A stretch of 64,000 nt of DNA, taken from Chlorokybus atmophyticus (Eukaryota > Plantae > Mesostigma and Chlorokybus algae). The stretch is from assembly GCA_009103225.1 (NCBI GenBank), contig RHPI01003642.1:1169099-1233098 (forward strand), written 5' to 3'. The translations under genes were made by a program, and so were the position numbers. Of the stretch, positions 10,594 through 18,485 are shown in pieces. The first letter of the stretch is position 1. Every line of letters starts with the position of its first letter. Under the pieces are notes generated by a model. The model searched no databases. It was not told the origin of the DNA and was given only the letters and a program-made list of their open reading frames with translations.

Positions 10594-11190
10594 NNNNNNN
10601 NNNNNNNNNNNNNNNNNNNNNNNNNNNNNNNNNNNNNNNNNNNNNNNNNNNNNNNNNNNNNNNNNNNNNNNNNNNNNNNNNNNNNNNNNNNNNNNNNNNN
10701 NNNNNNNNNNNNNNNNNNNNNNNNNNNNNNNNNNNNNNNNNNNNNNNNNNNNNNNNNNNNNNNNNNNNNNNNNNNNNNNNNNNNNNNNNNNNNNNNNNNN
10801 NNNNNNNNNNNNNNNNNNNNNNNNNNNNNNNNNNNNNNNNNNNNNNNNNNNNNNNNNNNNNNNNNNNNNNNNNNNNNNNNNNNNNNNNNNNNNNNNNNNN
10901 NNNNNNNNNNNNNNNNNNNNNNNNNNNNNNNNNNNNNNNNNNNNNNNNNNNNNNNNNNNNNNNNNNNNNNNNNNNNNNNNNNNNNNNNNNNNNNNNNNNN
11001 NNNNNNNNNNNNNNNNNNNNNNNNNNNNNNNNNNNNNNNNNNNNNNNNNNNNNNNNNNNNNNNNNNNNNNNNNNNNNNNNNNNNNNNNNNNNNNNNNNNN
11101 NNNNNNNNNNNNNNNNNNNNNNNNNNNNNNNNNNNNNNNNNNNNNNNNNNNNNNNNNNNNNNNNNNNNNNNNNNNNNNNNNNNNNNNNNN
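10594..11190. other. Assembly gap (N run)
   Basis: N run preceded by gtaaagagcccccctc and followed by a polypyrimidine tract. Confidence 0.9.
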
Positions 11191-11985: not shown

Positions 11986-14900
11986 TCACAAATCTCGTTG
12001 AATGGTGGCAATGTCGCCCGCTTTGACTACGTAATCGACGACATCAAAAGTCGACGCTATCATCGACCTTGCCTGTGAGACAACCAGCACAGTCTGCTGC
12101 TCCAGACTTCGCAACACGCTGGCCACTCGCCTGAGCAAACATATCCATATAGAATCAGACTACCTCCTCACACAACCTGCTGTTCTGTCAGCTGTGTAAT
12201 GCACGTACCGGCATCCTTCATCATCAAGGTGTTGCAGGACCTCGTCAAGGACGATGACGCTGCAATGAATGCCATTGCGGTCCCGCAAGAAGTCCGCATA
12301 ACACAAGGCCACAGCTAGTTCAAGGCGCCGCCGCTCACCGCCAGAGAGCTGCTTCAGCGATCGCTGTGCACAGAGCAAGGGTCCAAGCAATAGCAAGAAA
12401 TTAGCAAGAAAGGCCAGGGCGCAGCATACCGAAGTACATGCTGAAACTCATTGGGGAAGCCAAGTCACCTGAACCAGCTCGCCACTCGCGGTGCGCACAT
12501 AGACAACCTTGTTGATGCGCTCAGCGACATTCTTGGTAGTGCGTGACTGCAGGCAGCAAACAAGAAGAGAAGGGTTAACCACAGTCAATGCGCACCAGAC
12601 TGCTAAGTTTGGAAGAATGTTGCCAAAAGAAGAAGCACAAGCAAAACACACTTGTGACACTGCACCTGAGTGGTGGCTTGCAGCTCCAGGGACAAAGTGC
12701 CACCGGACAGCAGCTCAAGATACTGACCCGCGCGAGACTGTAACTCCGCCAGTGCACCCTCCACGACATAGCTCTGAAGGCATGTTCATCATCAGTACTC
12801 ATCGCCACCATGCGCCTTCAGCAGATGGACAAGGAGGCTGTTTGCATGCTGACCTGGATGCCGGTGTGTCCGTATGCAACATCCACTTCTTTCAGCTCCT
12901 CTGCCTGCTGCTTGAGTGTGCTGTACTGAGCCTTCATTCTGATCAACTGGTCTTCCTGTGATGCGTGCTGTTCTCTGAGTGCTGCCGCCTTCGCTGCAAA
13001 AGGATTTGCCTCCTGGTGTGCCGCTTGCTCAAGCACCCTGCACAGACAAATTTGAATACTACAACCCAGCAACATTGCTTGCCGTTACTCATGACACCAG
13101 TACCTGTAGCTAGCAACAGAACTGCGCGCATTGGCAGACCAACTCCTGATGGCAGCTGTCAACTCTGCCAGCCTTGCTAGCAGCCCCTGTCGTTTCTCAG
13201 CAACCGACAAGTTGCTGCCCTCCATTGCCGCACTAGCTTCACTAAGCTCCACCACTGGCATTGCAGCCTTAATGGACTCTGGCAAATCAGAAACCATCAG
13301 CTGCGCAGCGTGTCCTTGCTGTTGCGCATCTGTCAAGTGATCCCGTATCCGGCGTTCCTGAGCCCTGTAAACCACAACATGCAATTGGATACAACGTCTA
13401 GGGCAACGTCATGCAATCCCGTGGTGCTGGCTCTGACCTGTGTGCCGCAGCAGCTTCCTGCAACTTCTGCTGCGCTTGACGACGTGCTTCAGCCAGCATC
13501 TTTATTTGATTTGTCAAAGCACGTAACTCATCGTGACATGCCATTCTGCGACCTGTGACGGCCCTCAGGTCTTCAGCCGCAACAGCAGCCGCAGCATGCA
13601 ACTTATGCAGCGTGTCTGTGTGATGTTCAGGGCCGATAGGCTGCAAGCACAATCCACACGTAGGCAATTGCGTGCCGCTTTCAAACTTGGCGAGTTGCGC
13701 ATTGCTTGCAGCTGCAACCGTCCTAGCTGAAGCTTCCTGCAACAAACACCGGTCAGCGTGCAGAACTACGTCGTCTTTGGCTGGGCAGTTCCTGTGCAGG
13801 TCAGGCATTGCAGGATGTGCAGCTAGTTACTTCGAACCCACCAGCGACATAACAAGCAGCACCTACCGCAGATGTGTACTTCGCCAACTCGGCAGTCAGC
13901 AGCTGCCGATCACTCTCAAGTTCTCTTTCTTCAACGCTTACATCCAACACCGACACAGCCTCTTCTTGCATGCGGTCACCCAACTCATTTACCTGCCAGG
14001 TTATTATAACTTTATCCAGCATGCAAACACAGCAAACAAACAGTGACTGAAATATCACATCATCACCTGCTGTACGCACTGTAATATATTTGCACAGCAA
14101 ACAAACAAAGTGACTAACACATATTACATCATACCTGCTGTATGCACTGAAATATCCTTGTAGCTTGCACCAGGCCTTGTGCAAGCTGTGCGGCGGTCTT
14201 GGCCGCCACATCCGACAGCAACGCCATCTTTTTCTGCTGCTGCTCCACCCACTCCACACTGCGGCGTTTGCAGACAGTGATCTGCTCTGCATGTTCCTTC
14301 AATGAGGCTTCCAGCAGTGCTACAGCACCCTCGAGCATGTTCAGCTCTTTGACTGTTGCTTTCAGGTGCTCAGAAGATTTCTCCTTTGCTCGCGACCAAG
14401 CATCCAAGTTGACAACGCGGCCGATCTCATCTTTGAACGCTCTGTCTGTTGAGTCTAGAAGGCCATTGATGGCGTACTGCCCATGGAAAGCCATGCGTGC
14501 AATGGCTGAGGTGTCCATAGCTTGGTCTAACTTCTCCTGTGTCAGCTTCATCTCCTGACACGTCAGATCTTCACCGCCAACCCAAAATTGCAAGCTCGAG
14601 TGCCTGCATGACAAGAGCAGTAGTCAGGGTGAGAAGTAACCGCATGCCAATTGCAAATAGCAGAACAATTCAGCTCTTCCCAGTGTGTTATGCGCATGTT
14701 GACACCAGCTGCAGTCATACCTGGCTCCAACAGATCGCTGGACAGTGAAGTCTTTGCCGTTTAGCACACCTTCAAGGCGCACGGTTGCGCGTTTAGCCGT
14801 GTGATGCACCAAGTCGCTGCCATTCAACCCAGTCAGAGCGCCAGGCCGCGGATCCGTACTGCCTGCGCGAGCAGAAGCCAACATTAACAAACAGAAACCA

Positions 14901-17900
14901 TGCAATCATATAATGCTCAAGCTCAACGCTGTGCTTTTGACAAGCCTAAAGCAGTTGAGATTTTGTACAGTCCATACTGTACCTGTCAGCGCCCAGAGCG
15001 GCGCCATGGCAAGCGTTGTTTTGCCCGCGCCGTTGCTGTCCGCTCCAAAGCTGTCTACGTTGCGTCCTGATATGACACAAAGGCCCCGGCGCGCCAGCGG
15101 GTACTCTGTTTTGTGCAAGAATGGACCGTACCCTTCCAGCTCAATTCGGCTAAACTCTACATGCACTGCACACGGAGACTATGTCACAGTGGGGTTGACA
15201 ATAACAACATGCACACTGAGACGTATGCAAGGTTTAGTCACATGTCCCTTTCTGTGAGAAACGCACCAGCATAACACAACGAACACGCTTACCGTTTTCT
15301 GGCTGGACCAGGCCAGCAGGCAAGGACAACTCCTCTAGTAATGTTCGTCCCAACAACCTTGCACCATCGCTCATGCTGACATTCTCAGCATACTTGTCAA
15401 ACAACCTGTAGATGCCCTGGAAACACTCAATAAGCATCATCTCCCACTAAAGTCAATTGTCAATGGCCATTGCTCAACATCTACAGCAATCGGAGAGTGG
15501 CATAAAGACCATGCACCATTAACATGATGCCATCGCACACGCCTTGATAGCTTTCCGTACCAGGTCTTGAACTGACTCGATGCGTGGAGGCACGGCATTC
15601 GGGATGTGAACCAGCTCCAAGTTTACACCTTTCAATTTGAGCCCATCCTGCAAAGTGCACTGTTGTCACTGATACCCTTCCAGAGTATGGTACCCGACAC
15701 TCGTATGCAAGGCTCTCAGCAATGGACCATACCACAAGACTGCTTTTGGAGGCGGAGTTGTCTGTGGTCGTTAAGCGCACTCGATCACCTGCTTGCACGT
15801 CCACGAGCTGCTGTTCTGCACCTCCAGCATCTAAGCTGACTGCGAAATGACGGGGCCCGAAGCTGATGGGGATTGCATCCATGACCTGTCATAGATCGCT
15901 ACCGGCTCAGCCCAGGCAACACACTATGATCACACTTGTGCAGTCAATGACACTTACCTGCCACTCTTTATTCAGCACCAGGAAGCGCTTCTCTTGACCC
16001 GCCTCACCATGAGATACCTGAGAGAGTTCAAGACCACCAGTTTTGGTACGAAGAAACTACTAGAAATACCCTGCAGTGCCCGCGTGCACTGTACCTGATA
16101 CGGTGAGCCCACATATGTGATGTCTGAATGTGACACAGTGTGCGGCTTGTGATAGTGCCCAGTGAAAACGGGAATGGAAACAGGAAATATAGAGGCTTCT
16201 AACCCAGAGCGCGCTTGACACGCTTCGTTCATATATGCACCCATCTGCAGACACAAAAGCTGATCTACTGCCGCTGTCGCAGTTCTTATCCCAACATACA
16301 GCCAAGAGGCAGCAAGCATGATTCGATGCAACGGCACGTACTACATCCACGTGAGCAAAGACAGCTTTCACACCATTGCCATGCATCTGCATGGCAGCCT
16401 TGATAGCCTCTTGATCGCGTCGATACGGCAACCACAGTGCATCCAGAAACACAGCTGGCTCGGAAAAGACGCGTATATACCCATTACCGGCGGCCTCCAG
16501 AGGCATCAGCGCATGCAGCGAACCGCCCAAGTTCACCTGTACAAAACACAGGACAGCAGAGGGAGATATAAGAAGGGTTTAAGTGAGAGTGATGAGCTGT
16601 CTGGGCCTCAGTTTTAGCCTGCACTTTGGCCATGCGGAAAGCCGCGTGCAACGCCCTTGCCAACACTAATGGTACCATGCCGTTTTATAACACATACACC
16701 TAACTGAAGTCAAGCACCTGGTCATGGTTTCCTGGTTGCGCGCGGGTAACACCAACCGTCAGCACAGGATGTGGTATAAGTGTTACAGCTCAAGGCGCAT
16801 ATCCATGTGCCAGTTTAAACACCTGTACAGCCACCTCTATACCTGGTATCATGAGCATTGGCTGGGTCCATGTCTGCATCAACTCCAGCACTGCATTCAA
16901 CGGTTCCACTGGCAAGCTACCTCTCAAGTGCCAAAAGTCGCCCAGAAACAGTATCCCTGCATTCCTGTAAAGGACGCATTCGTTTCAGTGCTCACATGCA
17001 CTAGACCAGCCAAACGCATAGTAACACATCACTGCGCATGAGATTGCAAATGGAAAAGCGATTGGCTTCCACAGCAACCCCAGACAAGTGACCCCTTGGG
17101 TGCCAAGCTCTCAACAAAAACGAAAACCACAAAACTTCATACCTCTGTCGTGCAACTTCGTGAACATGCTGCAACACAGCAAGACACGTTTCCTGCGTTT
17201 TGGTACTGAGGTGCAGGTCTGAGAACACCACCCATGACTCGATTGCATCCCAGTCAGGAGCGTGTGCTTTCCGGCGCAAGCTGTCCCTGCTGCGAGCGCT
17301 CTTGACCCTAGCACCGTCATCAACTTTGGTGCTTGCGCGCCTGCTAGTTCCTTCCACCGCCAAGCTTCCCACCTGCCAAGTGGCGCTGCTTTAACCAAAC
17401 CCTAACCCTCGAGCACAGTACAGCAAGCAGTGCAGCAAGCAGCTGACTGTATGGCAATGGTAGTTGATGCGTTGAAAACGTTGGTATATCTCCAGAGCCG
17501 CTTATAAACACGAAACTGAAACACTACTGCTCAGATACTCCACAGCTGCTAATCCAATTATACCTGCTAATAAACACGACATTCAAACACTACACATAGT
17601 AAGAGAAGCATTGCAGTTAGTGCATTTGGCATGCAAGACGACAGTTCCTAAACCAGTGCATGCCGAGCACTTAATACAGGTCGTGTGATCACAAGCCGTC
17701 GACTCGACTGCTTACACACATGCAATTGACAGTGACAGTTTGATGTTTGCATAGAGCAAGTAAAGCAACGTGCATGCTACAAAAGTTGCATAGATCAGAG
17801 CAAGGTGCATGCTAAGTAAAAACCAAGCTTACCGCTGGTTGCCCAGTACTGTACAGGCGAGACTGCTTCAAAGCAGCATGCTGGCTGGTATCAGCACGTC

Positions 17901-18084
17901 CGCTGACCACTGCTGCTGCTGCGCCATGGAGTGGAACCGTACAACTGCCCAGCCCTGCTCCTCCAAGGCGAGCCTTCCCGCCTTGGCAGCATGACGATGC
18001 CCGCCAGAAGCCGCGCAGCAGAGCGTTGCGGCTAGCAAGCTGCAGCATGCCACACTGGGCGGTCCCAGAGACGGCGGATACCAT
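11986..18084 (-). CDS. SbcD-SbcC (Mre11/Rad50-like) nuclease-ATPase fusion with probable organellar targeting peptide
   Basis: Nuclease motifs: VFSDLH, LGDFWH, PGNHDQ, FAHVD, TGHYH, YVGSPYQ. ATPase motifs: Walker A SGRNVDSFGADSNGAGKTT, coiled coils, zinc hook PTCGLC, signature LSGGERRR, Walker B/D-loop VLDEVLQHLD. Exons between nuclease and ATPase splice in frame (...QPEN G|gtaagc...gcag|TG HVEFSRIELEGYGPF). Stop TGA at 11986-11988. An alternative ATG lies at 18144. Confidence 0.9.
17398..17409 (+). promoter_or_regulatory. Telomere-like/telo-box motif AAACCCTAACCC
   Basis: Motif lies in the first intron of the SbcDC gene. Similar TAGGGTTAGGG at 35540-35550 and a degenerate CCTAATCCTACCCTAA at ~38915. 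Confidence 0.3.
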
Positions 18085-18419
18085 GCGCCTTCCCTCGGCG
18101 GCTACACCGCCCCCGCGCCAGGAGGCGACAACGCCCACATGCATGCAGGCGATCTACATGTGCTGACGGCTTACAGTGCTTGTTGTCGAATCGGCGGTCA
18201 AGTGCGGCTCGGGCACAGGCGATGTGGGCGGCGGTCTTGAGGCGGCGGTGGCGGCAGCGGCAGCGGCAGCCAGGGGGCAATGTGCACTGCAGGTGGGCAA
18301 AGCATGCATCCGCAAAATACGCAGTAGTTGCTGCTTGTCAACTTGTGTGCAAGATGCCATCTGGCCGCTTATAACATACGACGTCTGCGTGCATGCCTAC
18401 AACGCACACGCCACATTCT

Positions 18420-18485
18420 CCCCCCCCCCCCCCCCCCCNNNNNNNNNNNNNNNNNNNNNNNNNNNNNCCCCCCCCCCCCCCCCCC
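18420..18485. other. Poly-C tract containing a short assembly gap (N 18439-18467)
   Basis: C homopolymer on both sides of the N run. Confidence 0.85.

What the first reader, a model, noticed from the sequence alone, without database searches (positions are those of the whole stretch)
11986..18084. Single-polypeptide SbcD-SbcC (Mre11-Rad50-like) fusion that appears targeted to an organelle
Seen in sequence: all five metallophosphoesterase motifs, Walker A, CxxC zinc hook, LSGGE and Walker B lie on one in-frame splice path, preceded by an Ala/Arg/Ser/Gly-rich, acid-poor N-terminal exon (…RNALLRGFWRASS…QSRLYST) spliced in phase 0. Established: bacterial SbcC/SbcD, T4 gp46/gp47 and nuclear Rad50/Mre11 are normally separate subunits. 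Inference: this is a fused, prokaryote- or phage-type hairpin/DSB-processing enzyme for mitochondrial or plastid genomes, distinct from nuclear MRN. The extended P-loop (GRNxDxxxxxSNGAGKT) looks more like phage/bacterial SbcC variants than eukaryotic Rad50.
Basis: partly seen in the sequence, partly recalled or inferred. Interest (0 to 1): 0.75.

Follow-up and report, generated by a model that had tools for sequence, protein, structure and literature searches.

The report
Single-chain phage-type Mre11-Rad50, probably plastid-targeted
This green alga (Chlorokybus) expresses one gene that joins a DNA-end nuclease and its ATPase partner into a single protein with an organelle-import-like leader; the fusion itself was described in 2011, but the evidence here points to a phage-derived DNA-repair machine of plastids, which nobody seems to have tested.

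Summary
On the minus strand, 18144/18084 to 11986, lies a 21-exon, all GT-AG gene. It encodes 1198 aa from the first ATG, or 1178 aa from M21. A 3928-nt spliced transcript contig, 100% identical, spans the whole CDS, and my model equals the public Chlorokybus protein Chlat1/5253.

The protein has four parts:
- a disordered, acid-poor leader of about 125-145 aa;
- an SbcD/Mre11 nuclease with capping domain, all motifs intact, and a confident SbcD-like fold;
- a short linker;
- an SbcC/Rad50 ATPase with an extended P-loop, Q-loop, CxxC hook, LSGGE and Walker B.

The fusion is not new. Yoshida et al. 2011 described a "moss-diatom-prasinophyte" Mre11/Rad50 fusion group, and an earlier scan note reports a second, divergent copy in this genome.

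- All about 240 listed homologues that carry a taxon name come from plastid-bearing eukaryotes.
- The nearest relatives are uncultured phages, fused and unfused, not bacterial SbcCD or nuclear MRN.
- Phage members lack the leader. Green members have transit-peptide-like leaders. Diatoms have a signal peptide followed by a Phe motif.

Plastid targeting is therefore likely but untested.

The parts
11986..18144 (-). Whole CDS of the fused gene: 21 exons, 20 GT-AG introns; 1198 aa from M1, 1178 aa from M21 at 18084. Exons (high..low): 18144-17833, 17372-17143, 16964-16843, 16731-16718, 16536-16342, 16244-16095, 16017-15958, 15885-15733, 15647-15561, 15416-15293, 15165-14983, 14862-14721, 14603-14135, 13992-13867, 13736-13438, 13364-13104, 13037-12854, 12773-12666, 12546-12469, 12363-12209, 12130-11986
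   Evidence: Spliced contigs of X1, X2 and X3; model building; identity to Chlat1/5253
17250..18144 (-). N-terminal leader (model residues 1-145; exon 1 plus the start of exon 2, intron 17373-17832 included in this span): Ala/Gly/Ser/Arg-rich, acid-poor, not conserved, modelled as disordered. Candidate organelle presequence.
   Evidence: Composition; homologue alignments start at about residue 145; pLDDT about 25 with no secondary structure; absent from phage members
15300..17249 (-). SbcD/Mre11-type nuclease, capping domain and two C-terminal helices (model residues 146-480). Motif I DLH 17211-17219; II GDFWH 16928-16942; III GNHD 16721-16843 (split by an intron); IV His 16351-16353; V GHYH 16149-16160; HLH-like helices 15327-15413.
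   Evidence: Invariant motif residues in 25-27 homologues; AF2 pLDDT 89.6 with all top 50 Foldseek hits SbcD/Mre11; PHROG 100 at 2e-30
16718..16731 (-). 14-nt micro-exon that carries most of motif III (GNHD)
   Evidence: Ten extra letters in the X1, X2 and X3 contigs at joint 16539->16842; AG/GT flanks
14411..15293 (-). ATPase N-lobe (model residues 483-655): extended Walker A/P-loop 15017-15070, Q-loop 14477-14488
   Evidence: Pfam AAA_23 on the exon; motif alignment; AF2 secondary structure
12872..14404 (-). Antiparallel coiled coil (about 150-190 aa per arm) with the CxxC zinc hook at its apex (CGLC, 13647-13658)
   Evidence: AF2 helices 638-788 and 805-1011 (P0230 numbering) with a loop at 789-804; C796 and C799 invariant
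11989..12859 (-). ATPase C-lobe (model residues 1036-1198): signature LSGGE 12334-12348, Walker B VIVLDE 12241-12258, D-loop QHLD 12223-12234, H-loop position Gln 12073-12075
   Evidence: Pfam SbcC_Walker_B; profile hits to Rad50 structures; motif alignment

Best explanation
This is an expressed nuclear gene of Chlorokybus. It encodes a single-chain, phage-type SbcD-SbcC (Mre11-Rad50-like) nuclease-ATPase. It belongs to the Mre11/Rad50 fusion group first described in 2011 in moss, diatom and prasinophytes. Shown here: one transcript contig, one reading frame, intact catalytic motifs in both halves, a confident SbcD/Mre11 fold, a Rad50-type head with a coiled coil and a zinc hook, and a non-conserved disordered leader. 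Inferred: the leader is an organelle presequence that takes the protein most likely into the plastid, possibly also into mitochondria. There two chains would pair through the nuclease domains, the ATP-bound heads and the zinc hooks, as in SbcCD and Mre11-Rad50. The enzyme would open hairpins and trim or resect broken or blocked DNA ends, so that the organellar RecA can start recombination-dependent repair and replication. Also inferred: the gene came from a bacteriophage lineage in which the same protein exists both fused and as a neighbouring nuclease-ATPase pair. It was present early in Archaeplastida and moved with red plastids into diatoms, cryptophytes and chromerids.
For: Transcript and gene model.

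Both halves are conserved and look active. Invariant residues: D136/H138, G169-D170, G202-N203-H204-D205, H268, G300-H301-x-H303, S506/N507/G510/K511, C796/C799, S1086-G1087-G1088, D1119-E1120 (P0230 numbering); Q613 of the Q-loop is nearly invariant (Thalassiosira has Glu there). Nuclease model pLDDT 89.6, with all top 50 PDB matches SbcD/Mre11 at E down to 1.5e-14. The family profile hits Rad50 structures at 4e-22.

Phage affinity. PHROG 77 at 4e-53 and PHROG 100 at 2e-30, against 20-27 bits for bacterial and archaeal SbcC, SbcD and Rad50 models. No close relative in one genome for each of 185,579 bacterial and archaeal species. Fused members without a leader sit on phage contigs that carry endolysin-type PG-binding domains, Erf, DnaC-like and replication-initiator genes. 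Unfused pairs sit in UvsX/RecA-SbcD-SbcC-RuvC modules. In the careful ML tree, eukaryotes plus these phages form a clade at 100/100, apart from cultured phages, T4-like gp46/47 and E. coli SbcDC.

Targeting. Alignments start at about residue 145. Residues 1-120 have pLDDT about 25. 62 of 78 green-type members have a leader of 50 aa or more, with a median of 1 acidic residue in the first 40 aa and no hydrophobic signal. Phage members have a median of 6 aa before motif I. In diatom-type members, 8 of the 9 with a hydrophobic N-terminal region are followed by [ASGC]-Phe, the pattern of diatom plastid presequences.

Distribution. Every listed homologue that carries a taxon name is from a plastid-bearing lineage: streptophyte algae, bryophytes, a lycophyte, chlorophytes, red algae, diatoms, brown and yellow-green algae, cryptophyte, haptophyte, Chromera and Euglena. 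None is from an animal, fungus, oomycete or seed plant. A cryptophyte, Chromera and the diatoms form one loosely supported group; it, the red algae, the phage clade and the green clade meet in an unresolved basal polytomy.

Context. A review table of plant organelle recombination factors lists no RecBCD or RecFOR counterpart (PMC7076466).
Against: No localisation experiment, proteomic record or dedicated predictor (TargetP, ASAFind) was available. The green-lineage leaders, including this one, are ambiguous between chloroplast and mitochondrial types. Some homologue models have short leaders (Coccomyxa 28 aa, Diacronema 32, one Pseudo-nitzschia 17), perhaps from truncated gene models. The H-loop His, important for hydrolysis in ABC ATPases, is Gln here, so ATP turnover may be slow or altered. 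The base of the tree is unresolved: eukaryote monophyly has only 63/19 support, so the direction and number of transfers are not proven. The 2011 paper reports Mre11/Rad50 fusions in slime moulds too (a different group), so fusion alone does not imply a plastid. The contigs show one assembled transcript but give no 5' or 3' end mapping and no protein evidence.
Confidence: 0.62

Rival explanations
1. The enzyme is the same, but it is imported only or mainly into mitochondria, at least in the green lineage, where it processes mitochondrial DNA ends and hairpins.
For: The leaders of the moss orthologues are Arg-rich and could form amphipathic helices. Many plant organellar DNA-maintenance proteins are mitochondrial or dual-targeted (table in PMC7076466). 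The Chlorokybus leader is compositionally ambiguous.
Against: Diatom orthologues carry a signal peptide plus a Phe motif, which directs to the complex plastid, not to mitochondria. The family is missing from the listed heterotrophic eukaryotes, which all have mitochondria. Lineages with secondary red plastids form a loosely supported group beside the red algae.
Confidence: 0.2
2. It is a nuclear or cytosolic accessory DNA-end processing or anti-viral enzyme acquired from viruses. The N-terminal extension would then be merely a disordered tail or a regulatory region.
For: The 2011 paper saw the fusions as sporadic virus-to-cell transfers with unknown roles, beside the canonical Mre11/Rad50. No localisation data exist.
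Against: The extension changes type exactly as plastid import systems do: a simple acid-poor leader in green and red algae, and a signal peptide plus Phe in diatoms. The family has been conserved with intact catalytic residues across lineages that diverged more than a billion years ago (established knowledge), and only in plastid-bearing taxa.
Confidence: 0.13
3. It is an artefact: two neighbouring genes merged by annotation or assembly, or a recent viral or bacterial insertion or contaminant rather than a host gene.
For: Prokaryote-style gene callers do split eukaryotic members into two ORFs on metagenome contigs (L001, L008). Assembly gaps flank the locus at 10594-11190 and 18439-18467.
Against: A single 100%-identical spliced contig covers the whole CDS, with 20 spliceosomal introns. 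The same structure is seen in a second study and in a relative 90-95% alike. The frame is continuous across the junction. Orthologues follow the streptophyte phylogeny. There is no gap inside the gene.
Confidence: 0.02

Closest known systems
Mre11/Rad50 (SbcD/SbcC) fusion proteins, 'moss-diatom-prasinophyte group' (Yoshida, Claverie and Ogata 2011, Virol J 8:427, PMC3175470)
   Same: Same architecture: N-terminal nuclease with capping and HLH region, a short linker, and a Rad50-like ATPase. Same taxa: Physcomitrium, diatoms and prasinophytes cluster with the Chlorokybus protein. These organisms also keep canonical Mre11/Rad50.
   Different: The paper treated the distribution as sporadic lateral transfer and never mentions plastids or organelles. 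Here the family is seen in all major plastid-bearing groups. It has lineage-appropriate targeting leaders and identified phage sister lineages.
Phage SbcCD-like recombination nucleases (PHROG 77 and 100: SPO1 gp21.3/gp21.9, Staphylococcus Twort-like 'recombination exonuclease A/B', Pseudomonas phage nickie, Escherichia phage Cyrano; more distantly T4 gp47/gp46)
   Same: Gene order is nuclease then ATPase. The ATPase is short (about 640 aa) with a CxxC hook. The extended P-loop (G.N.D..G.D-SNGxGK[ST]) is shared. The genes sit next to RecA/UvsX and RuvC genes.
   Different: Only about 22-28% identical. They are separate subunits, have no leader and keep the H-loop His. T4-like gp46 lacks the P-loop insertion.
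Uncultured marine and freshwater phage contigs with fused SbcDC (P0025 TARA, P0098, P0140, P0265) or split pairs (L002, L006, L007)
   Same: 31-41% identical over both halves. They are in the same 100/100 clade and share the family motifs FLGDFW, GNHDQ, SNGAGKT and LDEV.QHLD.
   Different: No N-terminal leader, His in the H-loop, and phage genomic context.
Bacterial SbcCD (E. coli SbcC/SbcD; PDB 6S6V, 7YZO) and archaeal/eukaryotic Mre11-Rad50
   Same: The nuclease half has the same fold (TM about 0.6, E 1e-14). The ATPase head has the same motifs and a zinc hook. The presumed mechanism is the same.
   Different: About 15-18% identity in the nuclease. TIGR sbcC and sbcD scores are far below their cut-offs. 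The coiled coil is much shorter than in SbcC or Rad50. It is a single chain with a leader, and no Nbs1/Xrs2-type partner is implied.

Membership tests
Mre11/SbcD nuclease (calcineurin-like phosphoesterase, DNA-end nuclease branch) | Five phosphoesterase motifs with the metal-binding Asp/His/Asn residues | tested here: met
   DLH, GDFWH, GNHD, H288 and GHYH are present and invariant across 25-27 homologues
Mre11/SbcD nuclease (calcineurin-like phosphoesterase, DNA-end nuclease branch) | Nuclease fold plus capping domain | tested here: met
   AF2 model pLDDT 89.6; all top 50 Foldseek PDB hits are SbcD/Mre11, aligned over 320-397 columns, TM 0.55-0.64
Mre11/SbcD nuclease (calcineurin-like phosphoesterase, DNA-end nuclease branch) | C-terminal helix-loop-helix that binds the base of the Rad50 coiled coil | tested here: inconclusive
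   Two helices are predicted at P0230 423-433 and 438-450, with a partly conserved LF..YA motif. No complex was modelled.
Rad50/SbcC ABC ATPase | Walker A, Q-loop, signature LSGG, Walker B and D-loop, split between N- and C-lobes by an antiparallel coiled coil | tested here: met
   SNGAGKT, FHGQ, LSGGE, VIVLDE and QHLD are present. Pfam AAA_23, SbcC_Walker_B and SMC_N match orthologues. Profile hits to Rad50 structures at 4e-22. AF2 topology agrees.
Rad50/SbcC ABC ATPase | CxxC zinc hook at the apex of the coiled coil | tested here: met
   CGLC at model 816-819; both Cys are invariant; it lies in the loop between the two long helices
Rad50/SbcC ABC ATPase | H-loop (switch) histidine | tested here: not met
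   Gln at model 1170. It is Gln in all green-lineage, haptophyte and diatom members, and His in red algae, phages, T4-like gp46 and E. coli SbcC.
Bacterial SbcCD proper (NCBIfam TIGR00618 sbcC, TIGR00619 sbcD) | Score above the curated family cut-offs | tested here: not met
   23.2 bits against a cut-off of 478.5, and 23.2 against 77.65. No close relative in one genome for each of 185,579 bacterial and archaeal species.
Canonical eukaryotic nuclear Mre11-Rad50(-Nbs1) | Separate subunits, very long Rad50 coiled coil, nesting within eukaryotic Mre11/Rad50 sequences | tested here: not met
   It is a single chain with arms of about 150-190 aa. The family profile matches human RAD50 only at 1e-12, weaker than archaeal Rad50 and far weaker than the phage families. 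No eukaryotic Rad50 or Mre11 sequence was put into the tree.
Phage SbcC-like/SbcD-like families (PHROG 77 and 100) | Significant full-length match to both profiles; extended P-loop | tested here: met
   4.2e-53 over residues 465-1174 and 2.1e-30 over 132-438. The P-loop insertion is shared with SPO1, Staphylococcus, nickie and Cyrano phages. PHROGs has no curated cut-offs.
Mre11/Rad50 fusion, moss-diatom-prasinophyte group (PMC3175470) | Fused architecture and clustering with the Physcomitrium, diatom and prasinophyte members | tested here: met
   It is in a 100/100 streptophyte clade with Physcomitrium, inside a 98/96 green clade with Ostreococcus. Diatoms are in the same 100/100 ingroup. That the paper's accessions are the same genes is inferred from species and architecture, not checked by sequence.
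Nuclear-encoded organelle-targeted protein | Cleavable N-terminal presequence absent from non-organellar homologues | tested here: met
   A leader of about 125-145 aa that is acid-poor, disordered and not conserved; it is absent from phage members
Nuclear-encoded organelle-targeted protein | Positive call by a trained predictor, or experimental localisation | not testable with these tools
   TargetP, PredAlgo and ASAFind were not available. No paper in the library names these proteins except the 2011 one.

The most novel reading that the evidence does not exclude
Plastids of nearly all algae and of early land plants use a bacteriophage-derived, single-chain Mre11-Rad50 as their DNA-end and hairpin processor. 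This would be the missing step that feeds organellar RecA. It would have been acquired once near the origin of Archaeplastida, passed on with secondary red plastids, lost in seed plants, and given a His-to-Gln change in the ATPase switch in the green and diatom lines. It would join the phage-type RNA polymerase and Twinkle as a phage legacy in organelle DNA transactions.
Probability: 0.45. Interest if true: 0.7.

Novelty: new member of a known kind. Interest (0 to 1): 0.5.

Why it matters
Plant and algal organelles repair breaks and replicate partly by recombination, yet a review table lists no RecBCD or RecFOR counterpart for them (PMC7076466). An intact, conserved, leader-bearing SbcD-SbcC found only in plastid-bearing lineages is a concrete candidate for the end-processing step. 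It can be tested directly in models that have the gene: Physcomitrium, Marchantia, Chlamydomonas relatives and Phaeodactylum. Plastid inheritance would also explain a distribution that was published as sporadic lateral transfer. It would add a recombination nuclease to the phage-derived parts of organelle DNA metabolism.

Tried and rejected
- Pfam on single exons gave only borderline AAA_23 and SbcC_Walker_B hits.
- The Walker A exon alone found nothing in the PDB.
- The spliced window protein could not be handed to tools as a reference until its public copy, P0230, turned up.
- The scan of bacterial and archaeal genomes with family motifs found only three remote C-terminal ABC matches, so a cyanobacterial or other bacterial SbcCD origin is not supported.
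- Many 620-660 aa 'stand-alone ATPase' hits are split calls of eukaryotic fused genes (L001, L008), not real unfused relatives. Only L002, L006 and L007 are genuine split pairs.
- Literature searches for localisation, or for any accession of the family, returned only the 2011 paper.
- Contamination or a merged-gene artefact was rejected on introns, transcript contigs and phylogeny.
Full report
**The sequence.** The window is eukaryotic, with short GT-AG introns and about 53% G+C. It matches the streptophyte alga Chlorokybus. An earlier scan note on this genome gave that name, and one search confirmed it. The finding lies on the minus strand.

**Transcript evidence.** I laid public runs on window 12000-17999, which is 6000 letters.
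- Run X1 holds one 3928-nt contig. It is 100% identical and skips 20 segments, all bounded by CT..AC on the plus strand, which is GT..AG on the gene's strand.
- Run X2, from a different study, holds partial contigs with the same joints. One of them bridges window 14203 to beyond 15560.
- Run X3 holds a 4719-nt contig that is 90-95% alike, so a relative, with the same structure.
- Run X4 holds unspliced DNA pieces, including intron sequence.
- Ten extra letters at joint 16539->16842 reveal a 14-nt micro-exon (16718-16731) that encodes most of GNHD.

**Gene model.** I resolved the junctions by splice-site shifts, by reading frame, and by the 1230 nt that the X1 contig places between two anchor exons. 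The result is a 21-exon CDS, 18144..11986, of 3597 nt and 1198 aa. The public Chlorokybus protein jgi/Chlat1/5253 (P0230, 1178 aa) is 100% identical from the second Met onward.

**Architecture.**
- Residues 1 to about 145 form a leader. The first 104 residues have 2 acidic and 11 basic residues and are rich in Ala, Gly and Ser. Homologue alignments start at about residue 145. AlphaFold gives pLDDT of about 25 and no secondary structure for P0230 residues 1-120.
- Residues 146-480 form the nuclease. Motifs I-V are present and invariant in the family. A model built with 27 homologues has pLDDT 89.6. Its 50 best PDB matches are all SbcD/Mre11: E. coli SbcD in the SbcCD head complex at E 1.5e-14, and Thermotoga, Methanocaldococcus, Pyrococcus and human Mre11. 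This part includes the capping domain and two terminal helices where Mre11 has its Rad50-binding helix-loop-helix.
- Residues 483-1198 form a Rad50/SbcC-type ABC ATPase. They hold an extended Walker A loop, a Q-loop, a coiled coil of about 150-190 residues per arm, a CxxC hook in the apical loop, LSGGE, Walker B and a D-loop. A family profile finds archaeal Rad50 heads at 4e-22, human RAD50 at 1e-12, S. aureus SbcD at 4e-7 and E. coli SbcC at 2e-6.
- One defining residue is not met. The H-loop His is Gln.

**Relatives.** A full-database HMMER search with the largest exon, local BLAST of my model and two word-indexed searches give hundreds of proteins of 1000-1700 aa that align over both halves at 30-48% identity.
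- Named sources: Mesostigma, Spirogloea, Closterium, Chara, liverworts, mosses, the lycophyte Diphasiastrum, many chlorophytes, red algae (Cyanidium, Cyanidiococcus, Galdieria), diatoms, brown and yellow-green algae, an ochromonad, the cryptophyte Hanusia, the haptophyte Diacronema, Chromera and Euglena.
- No animal, fungus, oomycete, fern or seed plant appears among about 240 listed rows.
- All are annotated as hypothetical, 'calcineurin-like phosphoesterase' or, wrongly, 'ABC transporter'.

**Affinity.**
- Against bacterial and archaeal family models, the protein scores only 20-27 bits for SbcC, SbcD and Rad50.
- Against phage families, it scores 182 bits (4e-53) on PHROG 77 SbcC-like and 107 bits (2e-30) on PHROG 100 SbcD-like.
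- A motif scan of one genome for each of 185,579 bacterial and archaeal species found no close relative.
- Cultured phages are about 22-28% identical and have the colinear nuclease-ATPase gene pair. These are SPO1, Twort-like Staphylococcus phages, Brochothrix A9, nickie and Cyrano.
- Uncultured phage contigs are much closer. Split pairs sit in UvsX/RecA-SbcD-SbcC-RuvC modules (L002, L006, L007). Their nucleases are 36-38% identical to the Chlorokybus nuclease half.
- Fused genes also occur on phage contigs (P0025 from TARA, P0098, P0140, P0265). These have no leader. Their neighbours are Erf, DnaC-like, replication-initiator, SSB and SNF2-helicase genes and endolysin-type PG-binding domains.
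- The extended P-loop is shared by this family and the SPO1, Staphylococcus, nickie and Cyrano-type phages. It is absent from T4-like gp46 and from E. coli SbcC.

**Tree.** I built a careful ML tree of nuclease plus ATPase: 41 rows, 1013 columns, LG+C20.
- The eukaryotic proteins and the uncultured phages form one clade (100/100) apart from cultured phages, T4-like gp47/46 and E. coli SbcDC.
- Inside it, the phage sequences are one clade (99/96). Green-lineage proteins plus Diacronema are another (98/96). Chlorokybus groups with Mesostigma inside a 100/100 streptophyte clade.
- Cryptophyte, chromerid and diatom proteins group loosely (80/83) beside the red algae.
- Eukaryote monophyly is in the best tree but is weak (63/19).
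- The pattern fits inheritance along plastid ancestry. It does not prove the direction of transfer.

**Targeting.**
- Phage members have a median of 6 residues before motif I.
- Of 78 green-type members, 62 have a leader of 50 residues or more. The median is 1 acidic residue in the first 40, and none has a signal-peptide-like hydrophobic segment.
- Among 42 diatom-type members, 9 have a strongly hydrophobic N-terminal segment. Eight of those are followed by a small residue and Phe (for example ...IPRS|FQF...IASS|FQL...ISNS|FHY). From established knowledge, this is the mark of diatom plastid presequences. Several others look N-terminally truncated.
- A leader whose type changes with the host's plastid import system, together with the plastid-restricted distribution, is the main argument for plastid targeting.
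- For Chlorokybus itself the leader cannot be assigned to chloroplast or mitochondrion from composition alone.

**Prior knowledge.** Yoshida, Claverie and Ogata (2011, PMC3175470) described Mre11/Rad50 fusions in Mimivirus, a phage, plasmids, bacteria, slime moulds, and a 'moss-diatom-prasinophyte group' with 91% bootstrap support.
- They noted that these organisms keep canonical Mre11/Rad50.
- They noted that the fusion order is compatible with the Thermotoga complex.
- They proposed a viral origin with sporadic lateral transfer.
- The paper does not contain the words plastid, chloroplast or organelle.
- No other paper in the library names these proteins.
I found the paper independently and could not find the paralogue.

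**Mechanism.**
- Shown: one chain that carries an intact Mre11/SbcD active site and a Rad50/SbcC head, coiled coil and hook.
- Inferred by analogy with solved SbcCD and Mre11-Rad50 complexes: two chains form the M2R2-like assembly. ATP closes the heads on DNA, and hydrolysis exposes the nuclease to cut hairpins and blocked or broken ends.
- Inferred from the leader and the distribution: this happens in the plastid, possibly also in the mitochondrion. It would supply ends for organellar RecA in recombination-dependent repair and replication, as gp46/47 does for T4.
- The Gln in the H-loop suggests altered ATP turnover in the green and diatom lines. This is untested.

**Verdict.** The feature is real and expressed, and it is a member of a published fusion family, so the fusion itself is not novel. 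The plastid-associated, phage-derived reading is new relative to the literature I could search. It is moderately well supported in silico and is directly testable.

Noticed in passing
window 16718-16731 (-): A 14-nt micro-exon encodes most of the catalytic GNHD motif. Aligners placed it as '10 letters between' a 302-nt skip with non-canonical ends.
   Followed up: yes
window 12073-12075 (-); alignment: The ABC-ATPase H-loop His is Gln in all green-lineage, haptophyte and diatom members. It is His in red algae, all phage relatives, T4-like gp46 and E. coli SbcC. This is a lineage-specific change at a residue that is usually needed for hydrolysis.
   Followed up: partly
N-terminal extensions of P0279, P0298, P0291, P0285, P0312, P0275, P0066 and others: Diatom, Euglena and other red-plastid-type members carry a small conserved module (VGD.V...G.V...GGWY.V.L....KRRG.QL) between the targeting signal and the nuclease. 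It is absent from green and phage members, and its function is unknown.
   Followed up: no
L015:10001-13528, L016:6111-9677, and the contigs of P0098 and P0265: Bacteriophage contigs (one from TARA Oceans, one 104 kb long) encode the same nuclease-ATPase as a single fused gene. It sits in a shared neighbourhood: SNF2 helicase, SLT, DnaC-like/Erf, HTH, PG-binding endolysin-like, RNase_T.
   Followed up: partly
L002, L006, L007; L012 (phage Cyrano), L013 (phage nickie): A recurrent phage recombination module: DnaB, then UvsX/RecA, SbcD-like, SbcC-like (about 635 aa) and RuvC. It parallels the RecA and RuvC-type (MOC1) activities known in plastids; that link comes from memory and was not tested.
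   Followed up: partly
run X3 on window 12000-17999: A 4719-nt spliced contig is only 90-95% identical, with the same exon structure and small indels in the leader exon. This is a second Chlorokybus lineage that expresses the orthologue; the leader evolves fastest.
   Followed up: no
If real, the two copies might serve different organelles. It was not recovered in my protein searches.
   Followed up: partly
L001:5522-9466 and L008:6593-9977: On eukaryotic metagenome contigs, prokaryote-style gene callers split the fused gene into a 'Metallophos' ORF and a 620-660 aa 'SbcC' ORF. Many database 'stand-alone ATPases' of this family are such artefacts.
   Followed up: partly
window 10594-11190 and 18439-18467: Runs of N (assembly gaps) flank the gene on both sides. 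The 5' gap lies about 300 nt upstream of the first ATG, inside or near the 5' UTR or promoter.
   Followed up: no
P0155 and P0038 (Ostreococcus), P0246 and P0248 (Micractinium, Chlorella): Public names such as 'ABC transporter AbcH.3' and 'ABC transporter (ISS)' are misannotations of this nuclease-ATPase.
   Followed up: no
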